From: Eukaryota sp. TZLM1-RC | Lineage: Eukaryota; Protista; Metamonada: BaSk clade | Direction of reading: 5' to 3' | Assembly (NCBI GenBank): GCA_040285825.1 | Contig: JAUPSS010000005.1 | Span: 930,001-994,000, forward strand | Length of the DNA: 64,000 nt | Shown here: one piece after another, positions 1-59,107 of the stretch | Numbering within the stretch: position 1 is the stretch's first letter | How the letters are laid out: each line of letters starts with the position of its first letter | Position numbers and translations under genes: made by a program | Notes under the pieces: generated by a model | What the model was told of the DNA's origin: nothing | The model's database searches: none | What the model saw: the letters and a program-made list of their open reading frames with translations, nothing else

Positions 1-11
1 TCAAAGATAGA

Positions 12-1315
12 TTGGATTGGAAGGCCTTCTTCCTAGATCAACACGGCAGGAGAATAAGGTTTCTCTCCATCGAGCAGAGAAGTAGGACCGACTCGGAAGA
101 CATCCTACAATCCAAATTGCCTGCCTGGTTTGACCCTAACTTTGATACGGAAATCCATAATTACACGGAGCTGACAGAGGGTGCTCCCACATATTTTAGG
201 GAATTTATGGAGCAGGAGGATAGTAGTGAACAAGACAAGCTTGAACCAGTAACACCCTGGTTTGATGAAGACGCTTTAAATAACATTCATACGGAACGAT
301 CAGCTGTATCCACGTATAGGAGCCGTCCTCACAACTACATCCAACAACATGGTAACTCGTTCACGAAACAACGAGAGTTTAGACAATGGGTAACGGGAGA
401 TCCATCCACATCTCTCCACCTTCCCAAACTGCCTGTTGTAGCCCCCATAATTTCTGAAAACAGCCAACCAATACAGGTCTGCTCTATTGACAGCATACCC
501 GAACACGTTCCAACAGTGAACGTCCCGGAACCTGTAACTAGACAAGACGTTGCTCCTCAGGAAGAAACAACTTCCTCTCAACCTATGGAATGTGAAATCG
601 GAGAAGACATAGAGTTGAACGGGCCAGTCGTTGGAGAAACGGCTCCTCCTCAACCCTCAGTATGAAACTCTTCTTCCGACAGATTTATGCGTATTGAGGA
701 CCTACAATCCTCAAGAAGAGCTATTGAAATCCTGTTGGCCACACTGTATTCGAATGCAAAGATCCTCGTTGTGCTAGAAGCAGAGTTCCCAAAGAAGAAA
801 GATTCAGATTAGAAGAACAGGAGGCGCCTGCTAGTAGAGGCAGTGTAGAAAGGGGCCGAGGTGGCCGTGGTAGACGTGTACATAGATTCAAATTTAGAGG
901 CCGTGGAGGCCGTTTTAGAGGTCATAAAGGAAGAGGTCAGTACAGACCTATTTATAACATCAACACTACAGAGGATATATCATCAAACGCATCCCCTACT
1001 GAGTCAAAACCGACCCGTTCGAGTACGGTTCCTCACAGACGGATCAACAACAGCAACCGGAACAGCAGGACAGGCAACTTACCTAATCGGGTACACATCA
1101 ACGCAATCAATCACAATCAATCAACAACCGATTTAGGAAACCCAGTCAACAACTTTTCAACAGCTCAACAAAATCTTTTAATTCCTCTACAAATTCACCA
1201 ATCCAGCTTTGATATCAATAGTATTTTTGATATTAATTCTACGGTTAGTGAGAACCACATCAGATCCCAGCGTTCTCCATTTCTAAGACTGGAGATATCA
1301 ATAAATGATATTAAA
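12..1315 (+). pseudogene. gag: gag remnant with the capsid region deleted
   Basis: 12-730 aligns with the Gag N-terminal region of ORF 54764-58789 (GRRIRFL.IE.RSRTD). Stop at 663. At ~730 it jumps, out of frame, to GHTVFECKDPRC and the RGG-rich segment. Confidence 0.88.
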
Positions 1316-4300
1316 ATGATTGCGACTATAGATTCGGCTGCGTTTTGTTCAGTTATCACTGCAGATTTAGCTGAACAATGCCATATGTCAATCAATAGCA
1401 AGGATACCATTAAGTTCTTACCAGCTAATAACGTATCCACAAAATCGCTAGGGAGTGCAACTGGTATTCTGTCGTTCAACGTAGGAAGCATTGCGCAACA
1501 AGTTCATTATAAACATACTCTTCCCATAATCCCGGGTTCGAACAAATTATTAATAGGGACAGACATGTTAAAAGCACTTGGGCTTCAGACGGATGATGGT
1601 CTTTTCATTAGATTAGACAAAGAACACCGCACTTTGCTAAATGCAGAATCAGAATTCGACTCTAGGATCGCTCAACATTCGATTGGGAACTTAGATAACC
1701 AATCACCAAGTCCTTCTGATTTTGAGGAGCAATTAGCAAGACCTGGATGTGAGATAAAATTAGATGATAGTAATAATAAATTAAAATTAACGAGTCTACT
1801 AAAATTATTCAGCGATGTTTTTAGTGAAACTCCTAATAGAAAAGGGATCGATTGTAATCCTCTAACAATCCCCTTTAGAGATGAGAATGCTATAGTACAC
1901 AAGCCTGCTAGACGGTTAAATCCCAGCAAAATGGAAATAGCAAACAACATATTTGATGAACTGATCGAAATGGGTTATGCAGTTGAATCTAATTATAAAT
2001 TCAGCTCTCCTATTGTCTTAGTTATATATCCTGACGGCAAGAAACCCAGGTTAACTGGAGACTTTAGTGGTAAAGATGGAGTTAATGCCCATACGATTTC
2101 AGTAGAGCCTAATCTACCTAGGATTAGTGATATTTTAGAATTTTTGAGTAGAGCAAATTACATCGCCACGCTTGATTTACCAAAAGCTTTCTGGCAGATG
2201 AATGTAGCTGATAAGGATATTGAGAAAACATCAATCTCAATTCCTGGAAGGTCAATCATGTTTAAAAAGAGCTTGCTTCGGATTAAAGAACATCCCAGCA
2301 GTTTTTCAAAACGTAATGATGGAAATTTTCCAAATAGACGGCGTTTTTATATACATTGACGATATCATAATAGTTGGAACGACATTCGAAGAATTTTATA
2401 AGAGATTACAAAGAGTCCTCCAATGCGCCAGAAATAGACGCGTAAATATAGGCTTACGTAAATGTAAATTCGTAACATCAAAACACCCTATCGACATTTT
2501 AGGAAGTACCTTCCAGGATAAAACTAGATTTATTAGTAAGAAAAAAATCGAAGCCTTGATGAGAATCCCTAGACCAAAAACAGTGAAAGAAGTTCGCTCA
2601 TTGGTAGGATCCATCAATTATATTAGAGATTGGCTTCCAGGTATTTCTGAATTAATTGCTCCAATTAACGAGCTAATTAAAGGAAAACCCAGAATAATTA
2701 AATGGACTAGCAAGCATGACGATTACCTAAAACAAATAAAAGACTTAATAGTAAACCACATGCCCCTTGAATTACCAGCTCCGGGCAAGCGAGTATTGAT
2801 AAGTACTGACGCTTCAGATGTAGCAGTAGGAGGTGTTATTTGGCAAGAAATTGAACCCTACTCCCCTGCAGGAACCCCGCTAAATAAAAGGAAAGTAAAA
2901 CCTTTGTCATTCTATAGTAGATTACTTACAGAAACACAAAGAAAATGGTCCACATTACAGAAAGAATTATATGCAATACTTTTGATTTTAACTGAAAGTT
3001 GTTTAGAAAGCTACTTGTTAACTAGACATTTAACATTTTTCACAGATCATAAAAACATTGCATTCCTGGCTACAGCCCCAGAGAAAAATAGAATTGTAAA
3101 GAGATGGCTGCCGATACTATCTGAATTCGACTTTGACATAGTCCACGAACCTGGTGAAGACAACCATTGGGCAGATATGTTATCGAGGAATATTGATTTG
3201 GAACAAAACGAGGAAACTCCTTCTATTTGTAGCATAAATATACCAGATACTTTACTTTCAAATTACGAGATACCTCCACTAGACGATGATTCTGATTCGA
3301 ATCTTGAAGACATCCCATCAATCTCATCTCTAAGTAGACACCAAGACCTACCTATTTTTTCTTCTTGGTTCTCTAAGATAAGATCCGAACAACAAATAGC
3401 CAAAAACAACAACGACTCGTTATTTGAAAATGTAATTCTAGATGAAAATACTCAAATTTGGAAAAATAATAAAAACAAAATTTTGATTCCAAAGAGCCTC
3501 AGAAAACAGGCACTACTATTAATACATGGTTTGGTTCAATCTGGTCACCCCAGTAAAAACGATAGTTTACACCAACTATCCAAAAGCGATTTCTACTGGC
3601 CCAATATGAGAAAGGACCTCATTAATCATGTCAAAAGATGCCCAACTTGTCAAAAAACGGCTCCAGTTAAAAGATCAAAAACACCTTCCACAGGATCTTT
3701 ATGGGCAGATCGTCCTTTTGCCAGATTAAACGTCGATACAATTGGACCCCTAAATTCTGACAACGAAGGAAATAAATATCTTTTAGTATTTGTAGACTCT
3801 TTCACTGGATATACAATTTTAGTCCCTCTAAAAGAACTCAATGCCTTAGAAACCGCTGATGCCTTAATTTGGAATGTTTGTGCTCTGGCATACCTATGTT
3901 AATTCATAGTGATAATGGACCTGAGTTCGCCAACGAGACTTTTAAAATAGTGTGTAACAGATAGCGATTGAGACGAGTAACTCAATTCCCCACTATTCAG
4001 AAAGTAATGGACTTGTAGAACGTAAACATAGAGACGTTCTTCAATGCTTAAGGAAACTATTAATAGATTTCAACGATTACGGAAATTGGTCTACATACGT
4101 ACCTATATCCCAACTATTAATAAATTCTACTAAAAGCAGAAAAACTGGTTTTACTCCATACGAACTCATGTTCGGTTCTTCGATTAGCCCAAGAACAGAC
4201 CCTGCTAATATATTAGGAAATTTATCCAAATTTGAAACTAATATCCCCTTATTAGATGACATCAAAATGAAAAACACTCGTCTACAAGAAAAAAGGGAAG

Positions 4301-4851
4301 AAGCAGAGCGTCACCAAACATTAAATACTCCGTCTTCAGTAGATAATACTAATTCGTGTTTTTTAGCATTCAATATTGGTGACTACATCTTACGTAAAAC
4401 CAAGCAAAATAATAAATTGCATGGATCTTGGAATGGACCATTTTTAGTTATTGACCTTCCTTCCAAATCCACTTTATTATTGAAGAATCTTACTACTGGC
4501 ACAGAATTAAAAGCTGCCAAGAAAGATTGCAAAACCTATAACGCAGAAAATCCACAGGACATTGAGTTCCTCAAGGCAGTCGCTGCAGGCGATTCCGAAA
4601 AACACGTTATAGAGAAAATCCTCTCAGAATACCACTCTGATTCAGGTAGTTTCTGTACTGTTCAATGGTTTGGCGGTGAGACAACAGAAGAGCCACTCCA
4701 TTCGGTTAGACACTCAGAAGCTTATAAGTTATTTAGTAAGGATAACAAGAAAATTGGAAAACGTACCATTAGTCGACGACAAGGTACCTCCAATGAGTCT
4801 ACGCCTTCTAAAAAGCCTAGACGCAGCAATAGAATTAGGAAAAGGAGCTAA
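1316..4851 (+). pseudogene. pol: pol (protease-RT-RNaseH-integrase-chromo-like tail), frameshifted
   Basis: ORFs 1316-2359, 2220-3902 and 4168-4851, with frameshifts near 2265, 3885 and 3960. Confidence 0.93.
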
Positions 4852-4980
4852 TTCTTAGTTTATATCGATTATTTAAATTATATCGATTATATGTATTTAT
4901 TATAGTTATTTCGTTATTTGTATATAGTTTTTATTTCATATTTTTATAAGCTGATTTATTTTGAAAAAGGGAAGAAGCAG

Positions 4981-5059
4981 TGTTGGCGCCCTAAGGCTTA
5001 TATAATATGAATGGAAAATAAATCAGACTTTTCTTTACTACAATAGACTTTAGGCAACA
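4981..5059 (+). repeat. 3' LTR (79 bp) of Gypsy copy A
   Basis: TGTTGGCGCC...GGCAACA, preceded by PPT GAAAAAGGGAAGAAGCAG. Homologous to LTRs at 50820 and 58873. Confidence 0.9.
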
Positions 5060-18704: not shown

Positions 18705-19785
18705 GTCAAAAGCCAACCTTCGACTTTGTTGCAATTGTTTGCAAATGAGTGAGAGTCCATTGAAAATTTAAAAACAATCAAACAAATTTTGAGGGTGCGT
18801 CATTTTGAACGGTTGAGACTTATTTTAAGATCAACATCACCATCCGTTTTTTTGGAATTTATTCGTATTTTTAATGAACACAGAACCAATTTTCAGCAAC
18901 ATTATTGGAAATTGATGCATCTCAGTTACGAAGTTACATTCTTTGTGGTACAGATTTTGATGGTGTTGATTATCATAAATCAAGCTACCGTTGTAAAGCT
19001 ACCTTTATTGGAGGTGGTAAAAAAAATTTATTTTTGAATTTGTGATGATCAGATGAAGCAGAAACATTTTTGAATGACTTTCAAAAAATGGTTCAAGAAA
19101 ACACAATGAAAAGATTTGATATTTTTTTATGGGGTTTTCGGATTCAATTTGCCATTATTAATAGATTAACTCGGTATTTCAATCGAATAAGAGAAGCTTT
19201 AGCTAGACAGCAAGCAGATCAAAATTTTGGAGAGGAAATCTTCGTTCAATTATAGTCGTCCCATTAGTTAGGAGTTAATTTAATTAAATGTGCATGTTTA
19301 ATAAATCAATACCTTATACTAAATTTGTGAATCGCTTTACAGAAAATATTGATCTCATTGAAAACTGTGGCGGCTTTTATTTTATTTTTTTGCAACAGGA
19401 AATTGAAACTGTTTCACAAAATATTTGGTCTAACTGTTTTCCCTCTGCTCTTGTGGAACTTTTTTCAAGAAGCTTGCTATCCTGACCTCTGATTTTTGTT
19501 AAATTGCAGAAAAAAGAGTGAACAGTTTCAGAAACCTTGAATTATCGTGTACCTCTTAGTTTGTCTAAAAAGAAATCACGCTTTGCAAACTTTCTGATTG
19601 ACCTTAAAGACAGTTGCTCAAGTTGCCTAATCTTTCAAGTTCTCAACATTTATGACCTTATACTCTATGATCATCAATGAACAATTGCTGTGAGAATGAG
19701 AAGTTTCTTATGGCCTTGTTCGTTGCCAAAGTATTTGACTTGTCGCTGCAAAAATGTAGTTACGGTTTCCCTTATTTTAAACTGA
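18705..19785 (+). mobile_element. degenerate internal fragment of RLE family A
   Basis: Matches ~9130-9935 (ILRSTSPS.SLEF); interrupted at 19046-19321. Confidence 0.8.
19046..19321 (+). mobile_element. 5'-truncated RLE non-LTR family E inserted in the family A relic
   Basis: FLNDFQKMV..LW..RIQFAI C-terminus. TSD AATTTGTGA at 19037-19045 and 19322-19330. Confidence 0.8.
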
Positions 19786-21576: not shown

Positions 21577-22685
21577 TGTTGTTGTTGAACTCAAATTGAA
21601 TTAGTAGGTTTCTTTGTATTTCGACTGATGACGTGATACTCATTTATGAATCAGTTTTATTAATAAACGCAGATTTCTCTCTCTCCCCTTCGTGTGTTCA
21701 TCTGCCTAACGGCATCAATAATTATTGGCCTTTCTTATTTCAGATGACTGTTCCTTCTGTAATCCTCCCGTCTCTTTCTTCCATGAAAGTTGAAAGTGTT
21801 CTCTTGTTCCTACAAGAGTGGAAGATCTATTCTTCTGTGATTTCTAAGAAAGAGCTTGTTCCAGCAAGACTCTTGGTCGATTCTTTTCTGTTAAAGTCTC
21901 TATCTCTCCAGAAATCCGACGTCTCTTCCAGTGACGATGTTCTTCTTAAACATCTACAATCTGTCGTATCGTTCGCCACGTACGAAAATTTTAGTTTGGC
22001 TATGTCAGAACTGAAGCTTGATGTCCGTATTGGTGACGTCCGAGAACGTATGTCCTGTTACCTGCGACGTTTCCTCCAGGTAAAGAGTAGGGCTTCCGGA
22101 CTGAAGTTACCAGACACAGCTTTTCTGAATCGATTTGCCAGAGGAATTTTTCCCGTAGGTCTACAACGTTCTCTACTAGCGAGAATTCGAGATGATGTAT
22201 TCCCAGATCTTCACTCTCTTGTCGAAACCACTACTGATGAGCTGTTGGACTGCTCTAGGGTTGCTTCATGGACTCGTGGTTTCAAAACCTCAGTGAATGA
22301 TGTGGAACGTACGGCTGGCACTAAAACGAGGTCCTCTTGGCGCTCTCAGGATTTAAAAAATCAATCGTGCTTCAAGTGCCACAAGCCTAAAAACATCTCC
22401 CGCGATTGTCCAACTGAAATCAAACATGAGGTAAATTATGTGTGTCACACAAACGATGCACCAAAGAGTTTAACAAACCCCATATCTTCCCTCTATTGAG
22501 CCAGTACTGTATTTGTCCTCAGAAAAGGGGGAAAAAGTAGTGTTGTTGTTGTTGAACTCAAATTGAATTAGTACTTGTCTTTGTATTTCGACTGATGACG
22601 TGATACTCATTTATGAATGAGTTTTATTAATAAACAACAGATTTCTCTTTCTCCCCTTCGTGTGTTCATCTGCCTAACGGCATCA
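21577..22685 (+). mobile_element. Gag-only mini LTR retroelement, copy 1
   Basis: LTRs 21577-21717 and 22541-22685 (TGTTG..CATCA, several differences). TSD GAAG. PPT AGAAAAGGGGGAAAAAGTAG. Single ORF. Confidence 0.93.
21744..22499 (+). CDS. gag: compact Gag (251 aa), zinc knuckle mutated (CFKCHKPKNISRDC)
   Basis: About 95% identical to ORF 51784-52539. Confidence 0.85.
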   Translation: MTVPSVILPSLSSMKVESVLLFLQEWKIYSSVISKKELVPARLLVDSFLLKSLSLQKSDVSSSDDVLLKHLQSVVSFATYENFSLAMSELKLDVRIGDVRERMSCYLRRFLQVKSRASGLKLPDTAFLNRFARGIFPVGLQRSLLARIRDDVFPDLHSLVETTTDELLDCSRVASWTRGFKTSVNDVERTAGTKTRSSWRSQDLKNQSCFKCHKPKNISRDCPTEIKHEVNYVCHTNDAPKSLTNPISSLY

Positions 22686-25900: not shown

Positions 25901-27164
25901 TGGTGTTATTGAAGTTGTTGATGTTGTCACTGTTGATGTTTGTAAAGACTCAGCAATTGACTTTGCTAAAAGAGATGAAACTCCACTTTGCTTTGCTGAA
26001 AAGAGCAAAATCAAAAAGTACAATGAACCCTTATCTCAGCTAGGACGTGTTGAGCATGTTAAGTATCAGTTGGTTCCATTTGCTGTTTCTCTTTTTGGTA
26101 ACATTGGAATATCTGGCATTAAATTTCTTGAAGGTTTCAGAAGTTTAATAAAAGAAAGAGCAGGAAAAGAATTGAACTTCAATTTCTGGCACAATAGAAT
26201 TGTTTTCAGTATTCTTAAAGCAATTCCAGAAATGTTGACCAAAGCACTGTTACAATTAGGAATAGAGTATGAAAATCGCGCGCTTAAAAGATTTGATGAT
26301 GTTGATGCGTGTATTTGATGCCGTTAGGCAGATGAACACACGAAGGAGAGAGAGAAATCTAACTTTATTAATAAAACTGATTCATAAACGAGTATCACGT
26401 CATCAGTCAAAATACAAAGATACCTACTAATTCAATTTAAGTTCGACAACAACACTACTTTTTCCCATTTCTCTGAGGACAAATACAGTACTGGCTCAAT
26501 AGAGGGAAGATATGGGGTTTGTTAAATTCTCCGGTGCATCGTTGGTATGAGAACGTTGGAGACCTACTGGAAGAATTCCTCTGGCAAATCGGTTCAGAAA
26601 AGCTATGTCTGGCAACTTCAGTCCGGAAGCCCTACTCTTTACCTAGAGGAAACGTCGCAGGTAACAGGACATGCGTTCTCGGACGTCACCAATACGGACA
26701 TCAAGCTTCAGTTCTGACATAGCCAGACTAAAATCTTCGTACGTGACGAACGATACGACAGATTGTAGATGTCTGAGAAGAACATCGTCACTGGATGAGA
26801 CGTCGGATTTCTGGAGAGATAGGACTCTAACAGAAAAGAATCGACCAAGAGTCTTGCTGGAACAAGCTCTTTCTTAGGAGTCACCGAAGAATAAATCTTT
26901 CACTCTTGTAGGAACAAGAGAACACTTTCAACTTTCATGGAAGAAAGAGACGTCAGGTTAACAGAGGGAACAGTCATCTGAAATAAGAAGGGCCAATAAT
27001 TATTGATGCCGTTAGGCAGATGAACACACGAAGGAGAGAGAGAAATCTAACTTTATTAATAAAACTGATTCATAAACGAGTATCACGTCATCAGTCAAAA
27101 TACAAAGATACCTACTAATTCAATTTAAGTTCGACAACAACATATTGAGGATATTGATTTCTAG
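22977..27164 (+). pseudogene. single ORF (~1118 aa): CCHC knuckle-RT-RLE; one nonsense codon plus an LTR-element insertion in the last codons
   Basis: ORFs 22977-24758 and 24795-26318 are in frame across TAA 24756. RPIAIGE, QGDPLGP, YMDD, RRADL. DACI|EDIDF* resumes at 27147. Confidence 0.92.
26316..27142 (-). mobile_element. internally deleted Gag-only element, copy 2 (non-coding)
   Basis: Identical 139-bp LTRs 26316-26454 and 27004-27142. TSD TATT. Early TGA in gag and a ~275-bp deletion. Confidence 0.93.
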
Positions 27165-36484: not shown

Positions 36485-37320
36485 TCAAAAATATATTTAT
36501 TCAACAACGAACAGGAAAACATCAAATACACAATTAAAACTCCACATCCTCAAAACCTGCCTCCTTTACATCAAAACAATTAATTGACAAAGATTCAGAA
36601 AATTTCCCACAAGAAGACAGTGAATCAGAAACAAGTTTTACCATTCCCTTAAAAATAGAAAATACAATCCTGTTTTGCCAGTAAACACGATTGAAAAATC
36701 TTCCAGTTCTTTCCTTTACAACTACAACAAAATCCTCAAGGAAAGCCATTGCAGCCTTACCCAAAGATCCAAGCAAAGAAAATACAAAAGGATATAAATT
36801 ATATTGGGCATGAGAATTCTCATTAACCGAGGAATTGGGTTCGCATATTTAGCAATTTTATATTTTTCGCCTGCAAGAAGAGGATTAATTATATCCGAAT
36901 TAATGAGATGTTCGTTAGAGGAATTACAAGGGTCAATAGACATGGCGTCTAAAATAGTAAAACTACCATTTAAAAGTCGGAACAAATAGAACACCTCTTG
37001 CCAGAGCCCTGGAAGCTCTGTTGTAACGTGTACTATCAATATTGGGATCATCAAGAATGAATTTTGATAACAGCGGTTCTAAAAAAGAATCTACTCGATA
37101 TGATTTGCACATTACATAAATTTGGTCCCTGACATTATTATGCACTTTGCTTCTAAATGTAATGTAATGGTTACAGTTCAAATGATGAGTAAACAAAAGA
37201 GGTTTACCTTATTTACAAGCTAAATGATAAGGCAAATTTTTTGGCCATAGAAAACAACGAAAACGCATGTTTAAAAGCCATTCATTGTTTTTTAACAAAA
37301 GTCCATAAACAGAGGGAATT
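36485..37320 (-). mobile_element. 5'-truncated RLE non-LTR family C
   Basis: HNNVRDQ, FLEPLL, LDAMSIDP, YWQNRIVFS across frameshifted ORFs. Confidence 0.85.
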
Positions 37321-49924: not shown

Positions 49925-50432
49925 TCGAATTAGAGAAGCTTTAGCTAGACAGCAAGCAGATCAAGATTTTGTAGAGGAAATCTTGGTTCAATGATAGTCG
50001 TCCCATTAGTTATGAGTTCATTTATTTAAGTGTGCAAATTCAATAAATACATTCTTTGTTCAAAGAAACAGACTCATTTTAGGAATCAACAATAACTTTA
50101 ATTAAAACTTTAGAACCTACTCATACTTCATCAATTGGATGAGGAAAAATTGTCCTTGTTCACTTGAATAGCAACTCGCTTGTTTTAAAACTCGCTAATA
50201 TATTCATATTTATTGAATTTGCACACTTAATTAAATTAACTCATAACTAATGGGACGACTATCATTGAACCAAGATTTCCTCTAAAAAATCATGATCTGC
50301 TTGCTGTCTAGCTAAATCTTCTCTTATTCGATTGAAATACCGTGGTAATCTATTAATAATGGCAAATTGAATCCGCGAACGCCATAAAAAAATATCAAAT
50401 ACTTTCAAAGTTTTTTCTTGCACCATTTTTTG
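49925..50432. mobile_element. two inverted 3' fragments of RLE family E (+ ~49925-50050; - ~50207-50432)
   Basis: Both match 19080-19310. Confidence 0.8.
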
Positions 50433-50783: not shown

Positions 50784-51617
50784 TTTTTTTGAGTTCATAT
50801 AAATTATATTTGGGTTTTCTGTTGCCTTAGGTTGCAAAAGTGGTTGAGATAAAGATAATTTATTTTCTATTCATATTATAAAAGCCTTAGGGCGCCAACA
50901 CTGCTTCTTCCCTTTTTCAGAGCTAATAGGCTTATACAAATATGAATCTAAACTATAACAAATAACTAAATAACTAAATAACTAAATAACTAAATCTAAA
51001 CTGAGAATTAGCATCACTTCCTAATTCTAGTACTGCGTCTAGGCCTCTTGCAAGGCGCAGAGTTATTGGAGGTACTCTTACGTTGACTAGTAGTACGTTT
51101 TCCAATTTTCTTGTTATTCCTACTGAACAACTTGTAAGCTTCTGAATGTTTAACTGAATGGAGAGGCTCTTCTGTTGTCTCACCGACAAACCATTGAACA
51201 GTACAGAAACTACCTGAGTCAGAATTATATTCTGAGAGGATTTTCTCTATAACATGTTTCTCAGCATCGCCTGCTGCGACTGCCTTAAGGAATTTGATAT
51301 CCCGAGGATTATCTGCGTTATAGATTTTACAATCTTTCTTAGCAGCCTTTAATTCACTGCCAGTGATAAGATTCTTTAATAATAAAGTGGAGTTGGAAGG
51401 ATGGTCTATTACTAAAAAGGGTCCGTTCCAAGAACCATGTAATTTATTATTCTGTTTGGTTTTACGTAGGACATAGTCACCAATATTCAATACTATAGAG
51501 CGCGAAGTAGTATTGTCTACTGAAATCGGAGTATTTGATAATTGATGACGCTCTGCTTCTTCCCTTTTTTCTTGCAGACGAGTATTTTTCATTTTAATAT
51601 CGTCTAATAAAGGTATA

Positions 51618-52720
51618 TGTTGTTGTTGCACTCAAATTGAATTAGTAGGTTTCTATGTATTTCGACTGATGACGTGATACTCATTTATGAATCAGTTTTA
51701 TTAATAAACAACAGATTTCTCTCTCTCCTTCGTGTGTTCATCTGCCTAACGGCATCAATAATTATTGGCCCTTCTTATTTCAGATGACTGTTCCTTCTGT
51801 CAACCTCCCGTCTCTTTCTTCCATGAAAGTTGAAAGTGTTCTCTTGTTCCTACAAGAGTGGAAGATCTATTCTTCTGTGACTTCTAAGAAAGAGCTTGTT
51901 CCAGCAAGACTCTTGGTCGATTCTTTTCTGTTAGAGTCCCTATCTCTCCAGAAATCCGACGTCTCTTCCAGTGACGATGTTCTTCTTAGACATCTTCAAT
52001 CTGTCGTATCGTTCGCCACGTACGAAGATTTTAGTCTGGCTATGTCAGAACTGAAGCTTGATGTCCGTATTGGTGACGTCCGAGAACGTATGTCCTGTTA
52101 CCTGCGACGTTTTTTCCAGGTAAAGAGTAGGGCTTCCGGACTGAAGTTACCAGACACAGCTTTTCTGAATCGATTTGCCAGAGGAATTCTTCCCGTAGGT
52201 CTTCAACGTTCTCTACTAGCGAGAATTCGAGATGATGTATTCCCAGATCTTCACTCTCTTGTCGAAACCACTACTGATGAGCTGTTGGACTGCTCTAGGG
52301 TTGCTTCATGGACTCGTGGTTTCAAAACCTCAGTAAATGATGTGGAACGTACGGCTGGCACTAAAACGAGGTCCTCTTGGCGCTCTCAGGATTTAAAAAA
52401 TCAATCGTGCTTCAAGTGCCACAAGCCTGGACACATCTCCCGCGATTGTCCATCTAAAATCAGACATGAGGTAAATTATTTGTGTCACACAAACGATGCA
52501 CCAAAGAGTTTAACAAACCCCATATCTTCCCTCTATTGAGCCAGTACTGTATTTGTCCTCAGAAAAGTGGGAAAAAGTAGTGTTGTTGTTGCACTCAAAT
52601 TGAATTAGTAGGTTTCTATGTATTTCGACTGATGACGTGATACTCATTTATGAATCAGTTTTATTAATAAACAACAGATTTCTCTCTCTCCTTCGTGTGT
52701 TCATCTGCCTAACGGCATCA
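51618..52720 (+). mobile_element. Gag-only mini LTR retroelement, copy 3 (intact)
   Basis: Identical 140-bp LTRs 51618-51757 and 52581-52720. TSD TATA. PPT 52561-52580. Confidence 0.95.
51784..52539 (+). CDS. gag: compact Gag (251 aa) with CCHC knuckle
   Basis: CFKCHKPGHISRDC; colinear motif matches to the copy B capsid region. Confidence 0.88.
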   Translation: MTVPSVNLPSLSSMKVESVLLFLQEWKIYSSVTSKKELVPARLLVDSFLLESLSLQKSDVSSSDDVLLRHLQSVVSFATYEDFSLAMSELKLDVRIGDVRERMSCYLRRFFQVKSRASGLKLPDTAFLNRFARGILPVGLQRSLLARIRDDVFPDLHSLVETTTDELLDCSRVASWTRGFKTSVNDVERTAGTKTRSSWRSQDLKNQSCFKCHKPGHISRDCPSKIRHEVNYLCHTNDAPKSLTNPISSLY

Positions 52721-54763
52721 TATATTGGAATCAAATTTTGATAAGTTTCCTAATATGTTTGCAGGGTCCGATCTTGGACTAATCGAAGATCCGAACATTA
52801 GTTCGTAAGGTGTAAAACCTGTCATTCTGCTTTTAGTGGAATTTATTAATAGTTGGGATATGGGTACATAAGTAGACCAATTTCCATAATCATTAAAATC
52901 TATTAATAATTTCCTCAAGCATTGTAGAACGTCTCTATGTTTTCGCTCTACGAGTCCATTACTTTCACAGTAGTGGGGTATTGAGTTACTCATCTCAATA
53001 GCTAATCTATTACACACTATCTTAAAAGTCTCATTGGCGAACTCGGGACCATTATCACTATGAATTAACATAGGTATGCCAAAAAATTGCGCAAACGTTC
53101 CAAATCAAAGCGTCTGCGGTCTCTAAGGCATTGAGTTCCTTCAGAGGGACTAAAATTGAATATCCAGTAAAAGAATCTACAAATACTAATAAGTATTTAT
53201 TACCATCACTATCAGTATTCAGAGGTCCAATTGTGTCAACATTTAGTCTGGCAAAAGGACGATCTGCCCAAAGGGAACCTGTGGAAGGTGTTTTTGTTCT
53301 TTTAACTGGTGCCGTTTTTTGACAAGTTGGGCATCTTTTGATGTGGTTTATGAGGTCCTTTCTCATATTAGGCCAGAAAAAGTCACTTTTGGACAGTTTA
53401 TGTAGACTGTCGTTTTTGCTGGGGTGGCCTGCTTGAACCAATCCATGAATTAATAATAGTGTCTGTTTTCTGAGGCTTTTTGGAATTAAAATTTGATTTT
53501 TTATTGTTTTTCCAAATTTGAGTATTTTCATCTAGAATTGCATTCTCAAATAGGGGGTCATTATTATTTTTGGCTATTTGTTGTTCAGATCTTATTTTAG
53601 AGAACCAAGAAGAAAAAATAGGTAAGTCCTGGTGTCTACTTAGGGATGAAATTGATGGGATGTCTTCGAGGTCCGAATCAGAATCATCGTCTATTGGAGG
53701 TATCTCGTAATTCGAAAGTAAAGTATCTGGTATATTTTCACTACATATAGAAGGAGTTTTCTCATTTTGATCTAAATCAATATTCCTCGATAGCATATCT
53801 GCCCAGTGGTTATCTTCACCTGGTTCATGGACTATATCAAAGTCGAATTCAGATAGTATCGGCAGCCATCTCTTTACAATTCTATTTTTCTCTGGGGCTG
53901 TGGCCAGGAATGCAATATTTTTGTGATCGGTGAAAATTGTTAGATGTCTAGTCAAAAGGTAGCTTTCTAAACAACTTTCAGTTAAAATCAGAAGAATTGC
54001 ATATAATTCTTTCTGTAAAGTGGACCATTTTCTTTGTGTTCCTGTAAGTAATCTACTATAGAACGACAAAGGTTTCACTTTTTTTTTATTCAGCGGGGTT
54101 CCTGCAGGGGAGTATGGTTCAATTTCTTGCCAAATAATGCCTCCAACTGCTGCATCTGATGCGTCGGTACTTATTAGTACGCGCTTGCCCGGAGCTGGTA
54201 ATTCAAGGGGCATGTGATTAATTATTAAATCTTTTATTTGTTTTAGGTAATCGTCATGCTTGCTAGTCCATTTAATTATTCTGGGTTTTCCTTTAATTAG
54301 CTCGTTAATTGGAGCAATTAATTCAGAAATACCTGGAAGCCAATCTCTAATATAATTGATGGATCCTACCAATGAGCGAACTTTTTTCACTGTTTTTGGT
54401 CTAGGGATTCTCATCAAGGCTTCGATTTTTTTCTTACTAATAAATCTAGTTTTATCCTGGAAGGTGCTTCCTAAAATATCAATAGGGTGTTTGGATGTTA
54501 CGAATTTACATTTACGTAAACCTATATTTACACGTCTATTTCTGGCGCATTGGAGGACTCTTTGTAATCTCTTATAGAATTCATCGAAAGTCGTTCCAAC
54601 TATTATAATATCATCAATATATATGAAAACGCCATCAATTTGGAATATTTCCATCATTACATTTTAAACATAATTGACCTTCCAGGGATTGAGATTGATG
54701 TTTTCTCAATGTCCTTCTCAGCTACATTCATCTGCCAGAAAGCTTTTGGTAAATCAAGCGTGG

Positions 54764-57700
54764 CTATATATAATCTGCTCTACTTAAAAACTCTAAAATA
54801 TCACTAATCCTAGGTAGATTAGGCTCTACTGAAATCGTGTGGGCATTGACTCCATCTTTACCGCTAAAGTCTCCCGTTGACCTGGGTTTCTTGCCGTCAG
54901 GATATATAACTAAGACAATAGGAGAGCTGAATTTATAATTAGATTCAACTGCATAGCCCATTTCAATCAGTTCATCAAATATTTTGTTTGCTATTTCCAT
55001 TTTGCTGGGATTTAATCGTCTAGCAGGTTTATGTACTATAGCATTCTCGTCTCTAAAGGGGATTGTTAGAGGTTTACAATCGATTCCTTTTCTGTTTGGA
55101 GTTTCACTAAAAACATCGCTGAAAATTCTTAGTAGACTCGTTAATTTTAATTTATTATTATCATCATCTAATTTTATCTCACAACCAGATCTAGTTAACT
55201 GCTCCTCAAAATCAGAAGGACTCGATGATTGGTTATCTAAGGTCCCAATCGAATGTTGAGCGATTCTTGAGTCGAATTCAGATTCTGCATTTAACAAAGT
55301 GCGGTGTTCTTTGTCTAAACTAATGAAAAGACCATCATCCGTCTGAAGCTCAAGTGTTTTTAACATGTCTATCCCTATTAATAATTTGTTCGAACCCGGG
55401 ATTATGGGAAGAGTATGTCTATAATGTACTTGGTGCGCAATGCTTCCTACGTTGAACGACAGAATACCATTTGCACTCCCTAGCGATTTACTTGATACGT
55501 TATTGGCTGGTAAGAACTCAATTGTATCGTCTCTATTAATTGACATATTGCATTTGTTAGCCAAATCTTCTGTTATAACCGAACAAAACGCTGCCGAATC
55601 AATAGTTGCAATCATTTTGATGTTATTTATTAAAATCTCCAATCTTAGAAATGGAGAACGCTGGGATCTGTTGTGGTTCTCACTAACCGTAGAATTTATA
55701 CCAAAAATACTATTGATATCAGAGCTGGGTTTGTGGGATTGTAGAGGATTTAGTAAGAATTGTTGAGCTGTTGGGGAGTTGTTAACTGGGTTTCCGAAAT
55801 CGGCAATTGATTGATTATAATTGATTGCGTTGATTTGTTTCCGATTGGGAAAGTTTCCAGTATTTCTGACCTTGTTGCTGAAACGGTCAATCCGACTGTG
55901 AGAGGTCATGCTCGAACTAGCTGACACGTTCTCAGAAGGGGATGATATTGATGATGTATCCTCTTGTGTATTTATGTAATAAATAGGTCTATACTGACCT
56001 CTACCTTTATGTCCTCTAAAATGGCCACCTCGGCCCCTACCTCTAAACCTAGAAACACGTCTACCACGGCCACCTCGGCCTCTAACTACGCTGCCACTTC
56101 TCGCAGGCTGATCAGCCTCGCCGATCTTAAACCTCAATTCTTTTGGTACCTTGCTCCTGGTACAACGGGGGTCTTTGCATTCGAAAACCGTGTGACCGAT
56201 AGAATTATTTCCTTCGGTGACGTTACAGAATGTACAGAACTTAGATCCCTCTCGTTCATGTCTTTCTGGGACATATTTGTTTTGGGGAGTTCCTTTGGAT
56301 CCGCCTCCCGAGCGACGTTTAGCACCTGGACCAGATGGTGTTGTGCCTCTAGAGAACGTTCTCATGGTCAAAAGGCCTAATGGGATGTCTTCTTCTCTTT
56401 CAGCTTGTTTTCTCAAAAGTTCCATGGTGTGCCTATTTCCTGTTGTTTGGCACCAAGCTAAAAAGTGTCTCCTGGTGGTCGAAATCAGGTCTAACAAAGT
56501 TGTACCTGTTGAAGGGTCCCATAGAACTTCTCTTGTCCAATGGCTTGCCAGCTCCTTGGTAATGGCAAAATTATCTATGCCCAAGAGAAAGTATTCTGCA
56601 ATAAGGGCGGGTGAGAGGGTTATTAAACCACTGCTTCCCCTAATTGATGCAGATATGGAGTGATCAACCATGTAAGTGGTCATCCTCAGGACGTCTCCAA
56701 AATCTTCGACGAACCTACCAAATTCGTTGTCCGCATCCACTTTGTTGTGGATGTTTCTCCAGTTTATACATGGTTTTGCTAGGGCAGAGCAAGCCTCATG
56801 ATATGAGGTAAATTGTGTCCTGCGTAGCAGAAAAACCATTAGGTCGGCGTCTGAGAAGTCCGGTCTTAGAAGTCCTTGGCCTTGCCATCTAGAGATGAGA
56901 TGGGGGTCGACCATGCTTGATAAGCCGGATGGACAAGTACTAATCATCATACTTCTAAATAAGTCATAATGATGGATAGGAGGTCCCAAACGTTTCGTTA
57001 GTTCTGGGTCGATCCTTAAGAGTGGCTGTTTCATGTCCCTGTCTATTTCTTCTCTGATGTGAGATGGGAGTGATGATAACAACTCAGGGGTAATCTGGGT
57101 CTTTCCTTCGCCAAATATTTGGGTTGCTATCAACATAGCACGAGACCAATCAGATTGACCAGGGGCTTGAAAGCTTCGATTGGCTATCTTGCGCCCGTAT
57201 TTGTCCCATGTTTGGAATTTGAGGAGGAAGGAGACGAGAGACATCTTGTTGAGAGGGTCCTTCTCAGATAGGTGAGGGGCTTTATATTCAGCTGACCTAG
57301 GCTGAGAGTCCACATGTCTCTGAAGACTACTTGCTATACTCATATCCAAAATGTTTCTAGGAGCTTGGAGGTCTTCCAAACGAAGAGGCTCCTCAGAAGT
57401 AACTCTTCTACGAGGGGGTTGAGGAGGAGGTGTTTCATCTAAACTAGGTCCTCTCAACTCGACTTCGTCTTCTGATGCACTAGTGAGCATAGGTTGGGAG
57501 GGACTTGATGGTCCCTGAACCACTCTGGTAGGTCTGTTTGCTCGTTCTGTCACATCTACTGTTGGGATGTGATCAGGGAGTACGTCAATGGAACAGACTT
57601 GTACCGGTTGCTCTTTTTCAGATATAATGGGGGCAATTATAGGAAGATTAGGTCTCTGGTGGAGCTCTGTTGATTGATCACCCGTGACCAAGAACCTGAA

Positions 57701-58789
57701 CTTCTTCTTCCTTGTCGTTGATTCCCCGAATTGCTGAATGAAGTTATTTGGGCGGCTCCTAAATGTGGATACGCTTGAACGTTCCGTAAGTATATTATTT
57801 AGGGCGTCCGCGTCAAAGAAGTCACTGACGGGATCCAACTTACTTGGATTTGTGCTGTCTGCTTGTTCCATGTATTCTCTGAAACAAGTAGGAGCCCCAT
57901 CCTCTACCTCTGAGTAGTTATGGATGATCGTATCAAAGTACGAGTCCATCCATGCCGGTAATTTAGTTTGCAGGATGTCGTCGGTATCGGTTCTGCTCCT
58001 TCGTTCGATGGCTAAGAACCTGATCCTTCTCCCGAACTGATCTAAGTGAATGGCTTCCCAATCAGGCCTATCTTTGATAGGCTTTGCCAGAATCACATGG
58101 ATCTCTCTATCCATACCGGTTATCCTAGGACGGCGTTCTGCCCCGCGTCCATAGGGGTCTCTACTCAAAGTGTCCAACGCGTTAATGAGTTCTCTTCTCT
58201 CATTTTGAGGGAATTCGTAGACTCTATTAGGGTCCCCTTTATGGCCCAGAGTCTGGAATCCCACATTTCTACCAGATTTTGATATTTGCTTCCAAAGGGG
58301 AGGGAGCTGCTCGAACAAACAGTAATCTGTTGGTTCAAGGTGAGCTTCCGCGTCCTTCATTATCTGTTGGCGAAGCTCTATTTCATCGTCGTCCATTTCT
58401 TCTAAAACGGACTGGAGTTCTTCGTAGTCCTTTAGGGCAGACGAAGTATCCGAGCTTAATCCAACATTTTCTTTAGGTGAGGAGGGGGGTGGTCCCGTTC
58501 CTGAAACCTTATCTGGTTTGTTGGACATGGAAAGGGCGGGAGGTGGTTCCGTGCCTGGTTCCATTGTTTTTGATTTGGAAGAGGCGGGAGGTGGTTCCGT
58601 GCCTGGTTCCATATCTTTCTCATGAGGAGGGGCGAAGGGTGGTCTCGAGCCCGAGTCCTCTTCTTTATTTGACTCTTCAGTCCCTGCTGTTGTTGTATAT
58701 ATGCACAAAGCATCTCTGTCGTACTGTTGCATCTGTCTAATGTAAAAAATTTGGCTGGAGTCAGTGTCCTGGCGAGGAGAGACTGACAT
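54764..58789 (-). CDS. gag-pol: Gag-protease-RT(N) polyprotein, truncated by frameshift
   Basis: 1341-aa ORF: long N-terminal extension, capsid-like helices, CTFC-X10-H-X4-C, RGG, IDSAA, RT start. Confidence 0.9.
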   Translation of the reverse strand: MSVSPRQDTDSSQIFYIRQMQQYDRDALCIYTTTAGTEESNKEEDSGSRPPFAPPHEKDMEPGTEPPPASSKSKTMEPGTEPPPALSMSNKPDKVSGTGPPPSSPKENVGLSSDTSSALKDYEELQSVLEEMDDDEIELRQQIMKDAEAHLEPTDYCLFEQLPPLWKQISKSGRNVGFQTLGHKGDPNRVYEFPQNERRELINALDTLSRDPYGRGAERRPRITGMDREIHVILAKPIKDRPDWEAIHLDQFGRRIRFLAIERRSRTDTDDILQTKLPAWMDSYFDTIIHNYSEVEDGAPTCFREYMEQADSTNPSKLDPVSDFFDADALNNILTERSSVSTFRSRPNNFIQQFGESTTRKKKFRFLVTGDQSTELHQRPNLPIIAPIISEKEQPVQVCSIDVLPDHIPTVDVTERANRPTRVVQGPSSPSQPMLTSASEDEVELRGPSLDETPPPQPPRRRVTSEEPLRLEDLQAPRNILDMSIASSLQRHVDSQPRSAEYKAPHLSEKDPLNKMSLVSFLLKFQTWDKYGRKIANRSFQAPGQSDWSRAMLIATQIFGEGKTQITPELLSSLPSHIREEIDRDMKQPLLRIDPELTKRLGPPIHHYDLFRSMMISTCPSGLSSMVDPHLISRWQGQGLLRPDFSDADLMVFLLRRTQFTSYHEACSALAKPCINWRNIHNKVDADNEFGRFVEDFGDVLRMTTYMVDHSISASIRGSSGLITLSPALIAEYFLLGIDNFAITKELASHWTREVLWDPSTGTTLLDLISTTRRHFLAWCQTTGNRHTMELLRKQAEREEDIPLGLLTMRTFSRGTTPSGPGAKRRSGGGSKGTPQNKYVPERHEREGSKFCTFCNVTEGNNSIGHTVFECKDPRCTRSKVPKELRFKIGEADQPARSGSVVRGRGGRGRRVSRFRGRGRGGHFRGHKGRGQYRPIYYINTQEDTSSISSPSENVSASSSMTSHSRIDRFSNKVRNTGNFPNRKQINAINYNQSIADFGNPVNNSPTAQQFLLNPLQSHKPSSDINSIFGINSTVSENHNRSQRSPFLRLEILINNIKMIATIDSAAFCSVITEDLANKCNMSINRDDTIEFLPANNVSSKSLGSANGILSFNVGSIAHQVHYRHTLPIIPGSNKLLIGIDMLKTLELQTDDGLFISLDKEHRTLLNAESEFDSRIAQHSIGTLDNQSSSPSDFEEQLTRSGCEIKLDDDNNKLKLTSLLRIFSDVFSETPNRKGIDCKPLTIPFRDENAIVHKPARRLNPSKMEIANKIFDELIEMGYAVESNYKFSSPIVLVIYPDGKKPRSTGDFSGKDGVNAHTISVEPNLPRISDILEFLSRADYI

Positions 58790-59107
58790 GATATCCGCTG
58801 AAGATATCCTCTGTTTGATAGCTGTGAGTTGTGTGAACGGTATACCTATAACCTAATACGGCCAATAATTATTGTTGCCTTTGGTTGCAAAAGTGGTTGA
58901 GATAAAGATAATTTATTTTCTATTCATATTATAAAAGCCTTAGGGCGCCAACATTTCTTGTTCTTTACTAGTGTTTATTTTTCAGGAAGTTTTTTCAAAA
59001 ATCGTTCTTCTGCAACATTATTTTTACATGGTTATGTTCTAGTGAAGAAACTGATTATGCAACAAATGAAATTAAGAAAATTTACGTTAAATTGATGAGA
59101 ATAAGAC

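What the first reader, a model, noticed from the sequence alone, without database searches (positions are those of the whole stretch)
51618..52720. 1.1-kb Gag-only LTR element: candidate satellite of the Gypsy elements that brings its own capsid
Seen: three copies (21577, 26316, 51618), each with TG..CA LTRs of ~140 bp, a PPT and a 4-bp TSD (GAAG, TATT, TATA). The intact form encodes only a 251-aa Gag with a CCHC knuckle, with no PR/RT/IN. The Gag is a distant, minimised homologue of the copy B capsid (LVDSFLL~MVDPHLI, SDDVLLRHL~SDADLMVFL, FATYEDFSLAM~FTSYHEACSAL, FARGI~FLLGI), and the LTR body is unrelated, so it is not a simple deletion derivative of A or B. The cis signals Pol would read are shared: TGTTG start, GGCA(A/T)CA end, PBS-region motif, G(C/T)AG|TGTT PPT junction and TSD length. 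Identical LTRs in copies 2 and 3 imply recent movement. Known: plant TR-GAG elements are Gag-only LTR elements but are larger. Inference: a satellite that keeps its own capsid and borrows Pol in trans.
Basis: partly seen in the sequence, partly recalled or inferred. Interest (0 to 1): 0.88.

Follow-up and report, generated by a model that had tools for sequence, protein, structure and literature searches.

The report
Gag-only mini LTR retrotransposon in Skoliomonas
This is a real and recently active 1.1-kb retrotransposon of the free-living protist Skoliomonas litria that encodes only a capsid (Gag) protein, belongs to an old Gag-only lineage kept under selection in three species, and must borrow its copying enzymes from another element, probably the neighbouring 7.3-kb Gypsy family.

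Summary
Window 51618-52720 is a 1103-bp LTR element with identical 140-bp LTRs, a TATA target-site duplication (TSD), a polypurine tract (PPT), and one 251-aa ORF made of a capsid domain and one CCHC knuckle. Two more copies lie in the window. An uninterrupted related Gypsy copy in the window proves the insertion.

The host is Skoliomonas litria, a metamonad. I checked 19 loci in three Skoliomonas species. All are Gag-only elements of 0.99-1.19 kb, and none has pol. Their Gags are compatible with a single clade. Selection on Gag is strongly purifying between subfamilies (dN/dS 0.085; elsewhere synonymous sites are saturated).

The closest pol-bearing relatives are compact 4.2-kb gag-pol elements in the sister species (32% identity). 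The window's own Gypsy A/B Gag is only a borderline match. Gypsy A/B (7.3 kb, 79-81-bp LTRs) nevertheless shares the LTR ends, the PPT, the 4-bp TSD and an identical 15-nt motif at the end of the 5' LTR.

That motif holds a 12-nt palindrome beginning at the LTR's terminal CA. It changes between families by symmetric substitutions, so it is not a tRNA primer site.

The element often occurs as dimers or trimers inside a single TSD, and once as an array of at least 17 units.

Verdict: a new protist variant of the TR-GAG kind. Borrowing Pol in trans is inferred, not shown.

The parts
51618..52720 (+). Mini element copy c3, intact, 1103 bp (LTR-gag-LTR)
51618..51757 (+). c3 5' LTR, 140 bp. Starts TGTTG, ends GGCATCA, and contains a TGATGACGTG box and an AATAAA-like motif
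52581..52720 (+). c3 3' LTR, 100% identical to the 5' LTR
51614..51617 (.). Left copy of the 4-bp target-site duplication TATA (right copy at 52721-52724)
   Evidence: The uninterrupted Gypsy A copy shows the empty site at 4241-4244
51756..51767 (+). 12-nt perfect palindrome CAATAATTATTG, starting at the terminal CA of the LTR. It sits where a primer-binding site would be and is followed by GCC, which can pair with the GGC upstream
51784..52539 (+). gag ORF, 251 aa. Helical two-lobed capsid domain (about residues 11-182) followed by a linker and the nucleocapsid region
52405..52455 (+). CCHC zinc knuckle (C209-X2-C-X4-H-X4-C222)
   Evidence: PF00098, E 6.6e-6; retroviral and Ty3 nucleocapsid matches
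52561..52580 (+). Polypurine tract AGAAAAGTGGGAAAAAGTAG, directly before the 3' LTR
   Evidence: Compare the Gypsy A/B PPT GAAAAAGGGAAGAAGCAG
21577..22685 (+). Mini element copy c1. Older copy: LTRs differ at 6 sites plus indels, TSD GAAG, ORF open but knuckle histidine lost
26316..27142 (-). Mini element copy c2. Identical LTRs and TSD TATT, but gag is broken by a stop, a frameshift and a 273-bp deletion
50820..58953 (-). Gypsy B, the candidate helper family. It has 81-bp LTRs (1 mismatch), TSD GAAA and the same CAATAATTATTGGCC after its 5' LTR. Its integrase gene is split by c3 and its reading frame is broken at several points
1..5059 (+). Gypsy A, a relative 87% identical to Gypsy B and cut by the window start. 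It has an uninterrupted c3 target site and a 79-bp 3' LTR at 4981-5059
   Evidence: An intact genomic member is L010

Best explanation
The feature is a non-autonomous Ty3/Gypsy-type LTR retrotransposon of Skoliomonas litria that encodes only Gag (capsid plus one zinc knuckle).

Origin (inferred from the tree and shared motifs): it belongs to a Gag-only lineage that most likely arose once, by loss of protease, reverse transcriptase, RNase H and integrase from a compact 4.2-kb element. This happened before the three sequenced Skoliomonas species split. The lineage has since diversified into subfamilies while Gag stayed under purifying selection.

Shown: the structure, the insertions with 4-bp TSDs, recent activity, the absence of pol at every locus examined, and selection on Gag.

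Inferred mechanism: its RNA is reverse-transcribed and integrated by Pol supplied in trans. The best candidate helper in this genome is the abundant and recently active 7.3-kb Gypsy A/B family. That family has the same LTR ends, the same 15-nt motif with the 12-nt palindrome at the U5 end, a near-identical PPT and the same TSD length.

Selection implies that the element's own Gag is needed for its spread, probably to coat or package its own RNA. Copy c2 hints that Gag too can be supplied in trans by sibling copies.

Tandem dimers, trimers and a long array arise either from read-through or multimeric cDNA, or from LTR-LTR unequal exchange.
For: Structure, TSDs and empty sites.

Host identity: 97%-identical proteins of 'Eukaryota sp. 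TZLM1-RC', which is S. litria.

Gag-only status at 19 of 19 loci:
- window c1-c3
- L002, L011-L017
- L001
- L008
- L004, L005, L006
- L018

No long protein from S. litria carries this Gag in a profile search of 1.8 billion proteins. Transposable-element ORFs were annotated in that proteome, so the absence is meaningful.

Tree: a clade of 14 short Gags from three species has support 94/93. Holding all 17 short Gags together is not rejected (log-likelihood +0.58, p-AU 0.53).

Selection: P0011 (S. litria) against P0010 (GEM-RC1) gives dS 1.82, dN 0.154, omega 0.085. Other subfamily pairs are saturated at synonymous sites with dN 0.28-0.95.

Capsid fold: AlphaFold2 pLDDT 85. The top Foldseek hits are PEG10, PNMA2, Ty3 and dArc capsids.

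Relatives with pol: P0041 and P0178, ordered gag-PR-RT-RH-IN, in 4.2-4.3-kb elements.

Helper signals.

Recent activity: an identical Gag at 7 loci and LTR pairs with 0-2 mismatches.
Against: There is no direct evidence of trans-mobilisation, expression or particles.

The S. litria genome could not be searched at the DNA level. A rare or unannotated pol-bearing element with these LTRs is therefore not excluded.

The Gypsy A/B Gag is at best remotely related to the mini Gag. Co-assembly of the mini Gag with the helper Gag-Pol is therefore not obvious.

The shared cis signals may partly reflect common descent of the whole clade rather than a specific helper relationship.

Within young copies, and inside the array, substitutions look neutral.

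Foldseek E-values are not significant (0.4-0.6).
Confidence: 0.72

Rival explanations
1. The helper is not Gypsy A/B. It is an unsampled compact (about 4.2-kb) autonomous element in S. litria whose Gag is related to the mini Gag, like L003 or L009 in the sister species. Mixed particles would then form between related Gags.
For: The mini Gag and its LTR box (TGATGACGTGG) match the compact GEM-RC1 elements and not A/B. Co-assembly is easier between related capsids.
Against: No such protein appears in the S. litria proteome. The three compact GEM-RC1 families carry different palindromes (CAGTAATTACTG, CAGTGATCACTG, CAGTGCACTG). The mini elements of all three species carry the A/B version.
Confidence: 0.2
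2. The copies are recent simple deletion derivatives of a full-length parent in the same genome with the same LTRs and gag. The Gag ORF is merely a young remnant.
For: Young copies show omega of 0.55-0.84 based on few changes. In GEM-RC1, a 251-aa Gag (P0074) turned out to be part of a decayed full-length element.
Against: All 19 loci from 7 subfamilies in 3 species are Gag-only. Subfamilies are saturated at synonymous sites yet keep ORFs of about 250 aa (omega 0.085). The single-clade tree is not rejected. No parent was found.
Confidence: 0.05
3. The Gag does not serve the element's own transposition. It acts as an interfering capsid, like Fv1 or Ty1 p22, or as a domesticated host gene family. 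Selection on Gag would then reflect benefit to the host.
For: Purifying selection alone does not say who benefits. A tandem array of largely intact ORFs exists.
Against: Every copy keeps LTRs, PPT, palindrome and TSD. Copies sit at different sites and inside other transposable elements. Units in the array evolve neutrally, with substitutions equal across codon positions. Eight of the 17 array units are broken.
Confidence: 0.06

Closest known systems
Plant TR-GAG elements (terminal-repeat retrotransposons with a GAG domain; Chaparro et al. 2015, PMC4350172)
   Same: Both are non-autonomous LTR retrotransposons whose single ORF encodes Gag with a zinc knuckle. Both lack PR, RT and IN. In both cases no matching autonomous parent was found in the genome, and trans-mobilisation is inferred.
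   Different: TR-GAG1 is about 2.5 kb (the class limit is 4 kb), has 485-bp LTRs, a tRNA-Leu primer site, a 5-bp TSD and a Copia-type Gag. Here the elements are 0.99-1.19 kb with 92-141-bp LTRs, a 4-bp TSD, a Ty3/Gypsy-type Gag and a palindrome in place of a tRNA primer site. The host is a metamonad protist. The lineage is shown to span species under purifying selection, and tandem multimers are frequent.
Compact Ty3/Gypsy elements of Skoliomonas sp. GEM-RC1 (loci L003 and L009; proteins P0041 and P0178)
   Same: They have a homologous Gag (32% identity, E 9e-39), short LTRs of 91-111 bp that start TGTT and end ACA, a (T)GACGTGG box, a 4-bp TSD, and a palindrome starting at the LTR's terminal CA.
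   Different: They are autonomous (single gag-PR-RT-RH-IN ORF, 4.2-4.3 kb), the palindrome sequence differs, and they were found only in the sister species.
TRIM and LARD elements, and partner pairs such as BARE2/BARE1
   Same: All depend on a partner's proteins that recognise shared LTR ends, primer site and PPT.
   Different: TRIM and LARD elements encode nothing. BARE2 lacks Gag and keeps Pol, which is the reverse arrangement. Here only Gag is kept.
Tandem dimers of transposable elements that seed satellite DNA (McGurk and Barbash 2018, PMC5932611)
   Same: Head-to-tail multimers share an LTR, and one is expanded into an array of at least 17 units.
   Different: Here multimers are unusually common among very young insertions (3 of 8 sampled family-1 loci). 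Each lies inside a single 4-bp TSD.

Membership tests
LTR retrotransposon (structural definition) | [quoted passage not shown] | tested here: met
   Found in three window copies and 8 further family-1 loci, all with perfect 4-bp TSDs. Empty sites seen.
LTR retrotransposon (structural definition) | Polypurine tract immediately before the 3' LTR | tested here: met
   52561-52580, conserved across subfamilies.
LTR retrotransposon (structural definition) | Primer-binding site complementary to a tRNA 3' end next to the 5' LTR | tested here: not met
   No conserved TGG-led site. Only the palindrome is conserved, and it changes symmetrically between families. The full tRNA set of the host was not available.
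Ty3/Gypsy (Metaviridae) Gag | Sequence homology to the Gag of elements with PR-RT-RH-IN gene order | tested here: met
   BLASTP 9e-39 to the N-terminus of P0041, and profile hits to P0178, P0062, P0068, P0107 and P0163, all with Pfam RVT_1, RNase H, Integrase_H2C2 and rve in that order.
Ty3/Gypsy (Metaviridae) Gag | Two-lobed helical capsid fold followed by a CCHC nucleocapsid | tested here: inconclusive
   The model has pLDDT 85. The first 11 Foldseek rows are PEG10, PNMA2, Ty3, dArc1 and dArc2 capsid chains (probability 0.35-0.98 across them, TM 0.30-0.69), but E-values are 0.4-1. The CCHC knuckle is met.
TR-GAG | LTR element under 4 kb with a single Gag ORF and no PR, RT, RH or IN | tested here: met
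   Only 41 nt lie between the gag stop codon and the 3' LTR.
TR-GAG | Mobilised in trans by an autonomous partner | not testable with these tools
   Only shared cis signals with Gypsy A/B are available.
TRIM | Miniature LTR element with no coding capacity | tested here: not met
   The element encodes a conserved 251-aa Gag.
Tf1-type self-priming elements | Primer site complementary to the first bases of the transcript within the LTR | tested here: not met
   The longest complement of the post-LTR segment inside any of the LTRs is 5-6 nt.
Chromovirus (helper Gypsy A/B) | Chromodomain at the integrase C-terminus | tested here: not met
   No Pfam Chromo hit in the C-terminal ORFs of Gypsy A, Gypsy B or L010, even at E up to 1. 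More distant metagenomic relatives do have one.

The most novel reading that the evidence does not exclude
The palindrome at the U5 end may be an RNA dimer-linkage site, and possibly also the minus-strand priming site, for this whole clade of elements. It runs from the LTR's terminal CA through 8-10 bases to TG, often with 3-5 further complementary bases on each side. On this reading, the Gag-only element carries exactly the helper's palindrome so that its RNA pairs with Gypsy A/B RNA. It would then be co-packaged, and perhaps primed by the partner's cleaved leader. This would be a retroelement satellite that hitch-hikes by RNA kissing while making its own capsid, using a mode of primer choice that needs no tRNA.
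Probability: 0.2. Interest if true: 0.85.

Novelty: new variant of a known kind. Interest (0 to 1): 0.66.

Why it matters
Gag-only LTR elements have been described mainly in plants. For those it has been unclear whether the retained Gag matters or is a passing remnant.

Here the lineage is minimal (about 1 kb), spans three species, and is under strong purifying selection. It coexists with a candidate helper whose Gag is almost unrelated. This argues that a non-autonomous retroelement can depend on keeping its own capsid, in the manner of a satellite.

The case also offers three further things:
- a compact system for asking how Pol is captured by a foreign capsid;
- a clade-wide, symmetrically changing palindrome in place of a tRNA primer site;
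- a clear example of a retroelement turning into tandem arrays.

It is also the first description of transposable elements in skoliomonads; the genome paper did not analyse them.

Tried and rejected
- Pfam on Gag finds only the zinc knuckle.
- The first AlphaFold2 run, with 12 close sequences, was poor (pLDDT 57). It was replaced by a 19-sequence alignment.
- A PDB sequence search matches only the nucleocapsid region.
- hhalign with the narrow profile found no link to the Gypsy B ORF (probability 0.6%).
It showed no relative above 29% identity.
- Tandem Repeats Finder missed the 957-bp array because its period limit is 500. The array was mapped by motif instead.
- The L006 gene at 127-927 and the call spanning 938-2883 are unrelated to gag or pol. 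One search failed on a spliced gene call and was repeated ORF by ORF.
- P0074, a 251-aa 'short' Gag in GEM-RC1, belongs to a decayed full-length element and is not Gag-only.
- Tf1-style self-priming is rejected.
- Folding the leader as a single strand gave no significant stability (z from -1.1 to +0.5).
- Rfam gave nothing relevant.
- The ARAGORN tRNA-Trp hit at 36972-37043 looks spurious.
- No chromodomain was found in Gypsy A/B.
- No DNA-level search of the S. litria assembly was possible with the collections on hand.

Full report
**1. The observation**

Window 51618-52720 is a complete small LTR element.
- It has two 140-bp LTRs that are 100% identical. They start TGTTG and end GGCATCA.
- It is flanked by a TATA duplication.
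- A polypurine tract (52561-52580) abuts the 3' LTR.
- It has one ORF (51784-52539, 251 aa), which starts 27 nt after the 5' LTR and ends 41 nt before the 3' LTR.
- Pfam sees only a CCHC zinc knuckle at residues 208-224.

Two more copies exist in the window.
- c1 (21577-22685): TSD GAAG. Its LTRs differ at 6 sites plus indels. The knuckle histidine is replaced.
- c2 (26316-27142, minus strand): TSD TATT and identical LTRs. Its gag carries a premature stop, a frameshift and a 273-bp deletion.

A self-comparison of the window supplies empty sites.
- The related Gypsy copy at 728-5063 aligns to both flanks of c3 with a 4-bp overlap.
- 36509-36985 does the same for c1.

The insertions and the 4-bp TSD are therefore demonstrated, not just inferred.

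**2. Host and family size**

The Gag is 97% identical to proteins of 'Eukaryota sp. TZLM1-RC'. This is Skoliomonas litria, a free-living haloalkaliphilic anaerobic metamonad. The genome paper did not analyse transposable elements.

- The 90% cluster around the window Gag has 58 member sequences on many contigs.
- One exact Gag sequence is encoded at 7 loci.
- A second subfamily (65% identity) has 42 members.
- A third subfamily exists, and related subfamilies occur in Skoliomonas sp. GEM-RC1 and TZLM3-RCL.

**3. Every locus examined is Gag-only**

I fetched 16 further loci.

| Group | Loci | Structure |
|---|---|---|
| S. litria family 1 | L011, L013-L016 | monomers of exactly 1103 bp |
| S. 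litria family 1 | L002, L017 | dimers |
| S. litria family 1 | L012 | trimer |
| S. litria family 2 | L001 | head-to-tail array filling all 16.7 kb fetched: at least 17 units, period 956-963 bp |
| S. litria family 3 | L008 | dimer, unit 1078 bp, TSD ATTT |
| GEM-RC1 | L004, L006 | 1.09 kb and 0.99 kb |
| RCL | L005, L018 | 1.03 kb and 1.06 kb |

Each family-1 locus is flanked by a perfect 4-bp TSD, and LTR pairs differ at 0-2 positions. None of the 19 loci has pol sequence next to gag.

The annotated proteomes do include transposable-element ORFs. Even so, a profile search of 1.84 billion representative proteins found no S. litria protein longer than about 300 aa with this Gag.

**4. What the protein is**

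- With a 19-sequence alignment, AlphaFold2 gives pLDDT 85. It shows an all-helical two-lobed domain (residues about 11-182), a disordered linker and the knuckle.
- The best Foldseek PDB matches are the PEG10 capsid C-terminal domain and the PNMA2, Ty3 and dArc capsids.
- Foldseek probabilities are 0.77-0.98 for the best chain of four of these proteins (PEG10, PNMA2, Ty3, dArc2), with lower-probability chains, including all dArc1 chains (0.35-0.51), also in the top ranks. TM scores for the four best chains are 0.48-0.69.
- The Foldseek E-values are not significant, so I treat the fold as consistent with a capsid rather than proven.
- Sequence evidence is firm. The Gag aligns end to end with the N-terminus of gag-PR-RT-RH-IN polyproteins: P0041 (32% identity, E 9e-39), P0178, and four metagenomic chromodomain-bearing elements.

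**5. Origin**

P0041 and P0178 sit in compact autonomous elements of GEM-RC1 (L003, 4.28 kb; L009, 4.23 kb). Both have 91-111-bp LTRs; L003 also shows a 4-bp TSD.

Their LTRs share with the mini LTRs the TGTT start, a (T)GACGTGG box, an AATAAA-like motif and the ACA end. Removing pol from such an element gives almost exactly the 1.1-kb structure.

In a maximum-likelihood Gag tree:
- The short Gags of the three species form a clade of 14 (support 94/93) plus an RCL trio.
- The autonomous GEM-RC1 families fall outside.
- Constraining all 17 short Gags to one clade is slightly better than the free tree (p-AU 0.53).
- Two S. litria/GEM-RC1 sister pairs of subfamilies, with RCL lineages branching deeper, match the species tree.

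The simplest reading is one ancient loss of pol followed by vertical persistence. This is an inference. Horizontal transfer and unsampled parents are not excluded.

**6. Selection**

- Between the orthologous-looking pair P0011 (S. litria) and P0010 (GEM-RC1): dS = 1.82, dN = 0.154, omega = 0.085.
- Between other subfamilies, synonymous sites are saturated while dN is 0.28-0.95, and all keep ORFs of 250-266 aa.
- Among young family-1 copies, omega is 0.55-0.84 on 3 to 23 changes. This is compatible with neutral decay after insertion.
- Inside the array, substitutions are equal across codon positions and non-coding sequence (0.45-0.64%).

This is the expected pattern if Gag function is selected at transposition and not in resident copies.

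**7. The candidate helper**

Gypsy B (50820-58953, minus strand) is the element whose integrase gene c3 split. Its relative Gypsy A (1-5059) and an intact genomic member (L010) belong to a family with 43+10 annotated ORF1 copies. L010 is 7296 bp with 79-bp LTRs that are 100% identical and TSD TTTA.

This family shares the following with the mini elements:
- the LTR start TGTTG;
- the LTR end GGCA(A/T)CA;
- the 15 bases CAATAATTATTGGCC that span the LTR end;
- the polypurine tract (GAAAAAGGGAAGAAGCAG against GAAAAGTGGGAAAAAGTAG);
- the 4-bp TSD.

The motif occurs nowhere else in the window. Other LTR families nested in the window lack it.

Gypsy A/B Pol is 36-40% identical to P0041 Pol. Its Gag region is barely related to the mini Gag. 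hhalign gives probability 0.6% with a narrow profile, and 57% (E 1e-4) with a broad one.

Gypsy B itself is broken, by frame interruptions and by the c3 insertion. The helper would therefore be other family members.

**8. The palindrome**

In every family, the terminal CA of the 5' LTR starts a perfect palindrome.

| Palindrome | Found in |
|---|---|
| CAATAATTATTG | mini elements of all three species, and Gypsy A/B |
| CAATAACGTTATTG | S. litria family 3 |
| CAGTAATTACTG | L003 |
| CAGTGATCACTG | L007 |
| CAGTGCACTG | L009 |

- All differences between these versions are symmetric: paired A-T to G-C changes, or insertion or deletion at the centre.
- The one exception is an older RCL copy (L018, CATTAATTATTG).
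- Only 14 of 4370 CA sites in the window start a palindrome of at least 10 nt.
- In most families, 3-5 further bases on each side are complementary, with different sequences (GGC/GCC, GGT/ACC, GCG/CGC, GCTAA/TTAGC, GCA/TGC).
- Nothing downstream is conserved. There is no conserved TGG, and no Tf1-type complement in the LTR.

The pairing partner is therefore the element's own sequence, as a hairpin or an RNA-RNA duplex, and not a tRNA. I propose, as inference only, a dimer-linkage role and possibly a priming role. Because the mini elements and Gypsy A/B carry the identical version, heterodimers would be possible.

**9. Multimers**

- Three of eight sampled family-1 loci, the family-3 locus and the family-2 array are head-to-tail multimers that share LTRs.
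- The dimers and the trimer each lie within a single TSD. In the trimer all four LTRs are identical.
- Units of the array are 98.2-99.9% identical.
- Two routes fit the data: (a) integration of multimeric cDNA, for example from read-through transcripts of an existing dimer or from template switching between repeated R regions; (b) unequal LTR-LTR exchange after insertion. The data do not separate them.

**10. Copy c2**

c2 has identical LTRs but a thoroughly broken gag. This suggests, weakly, that Gag-defective copies can be mobilised with Gag from sibling copies. With only 140-bp LTRs, post-insertion damage cannot be excluded.

**11. Comparison with what is known**

The closest named class is the plant TR-GAG (PMC4350172). 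The same features apply: Gag-only, non-autonomous, no parent found.

The differences are:
- the size is less than half;
- the LTRs are much shorter;
- the Gag is Gypsy-type and the TSD is 4 bp;
- there is no tRNA primer site;
- the host is a protist;
- persistence across species under selection is demonstrated;
- multimers are frequent.

A full-text search for Gag-only non-autonomous LTR elements returned one paper, which is plant-focused.

**Verdict**

I file this as a new variant of a known kind. The satellite-like dependence on a heterologous helper is the best explanation (confidence about 0.7), but it is untested.

The element is a retrotransposon of a free-living protist.

Noticed in passing
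window 51756-51767; 58863-58874 (-); L003, L007, L008, L009, L010: A clade-wide perfect palindrome of 10-14 nt starts at the terminal CA of the 5' LTR. It differs between families only by symmetric changes and sits where a tRNA primer site would normally be.
   Followed up: partly
L001 1-16753 (S. litria contig JAUPSS010000009, 755-772 kb): A satellite-like array of at least 17 head-to-tail LTR-gag units fills the whole fetched locus. The period is 956-963 bp and units are 98.2-99.9% identical. Nine of the 17 units keep the 250-aa ORF. The ends of the array were not reached.
   Followed up: partly
window 54764-58789 (-); L010 5180-5503: ORF1 of Gypsy A/B has an N-terminal extension of about 600 aa with no Pfam match. 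It includes 54-nt tandem repeats that encode a proline-rich MEPGTEPPPA-type motif.
   Followed up: no
window 59927-62359 (+): An 810-aa ORF with a RING finger and two B-boxes (TRIM-like architecture) lies next to Gypsy B. It is presumably a host gene.
   Followed up: no
window 49925-50049 and 50207-50331; also 19082-19306: A 125-bp inverted repeat pair (95% identical) has a third related copy elsewhere in the window. It may be an unidentified small element.
   Followed up: no
window 36972-37043 (-): ARAGORN calls a tRNA-Trp inside AT-rich transposable-element sequence. It does not look like a real tRNA locus or an extended primer site, and is probably spurious.
   Followed up: partly
window 7400-33200: This region is a nest of at least two other LTR-element families with 300-500-bp LTRs. 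They lack the CAATAATTATTG motif, and their Pol is not detectably close to P0041.
   Followed up: no
L005 1-499 (Skoliomonas sp. TZLM3-RCL): A neighbouring gene has a faint Cas12f1-like_TNB (TnpB/Fanzor-like) Pfam hit.
   Followed up: no
L018 3951-3962: In an older RCL copy (LTRs 97% identical), the palindrome has one asymmetric change (CATTAATTATTG). This is the only exception seen.
   Followed up: yes
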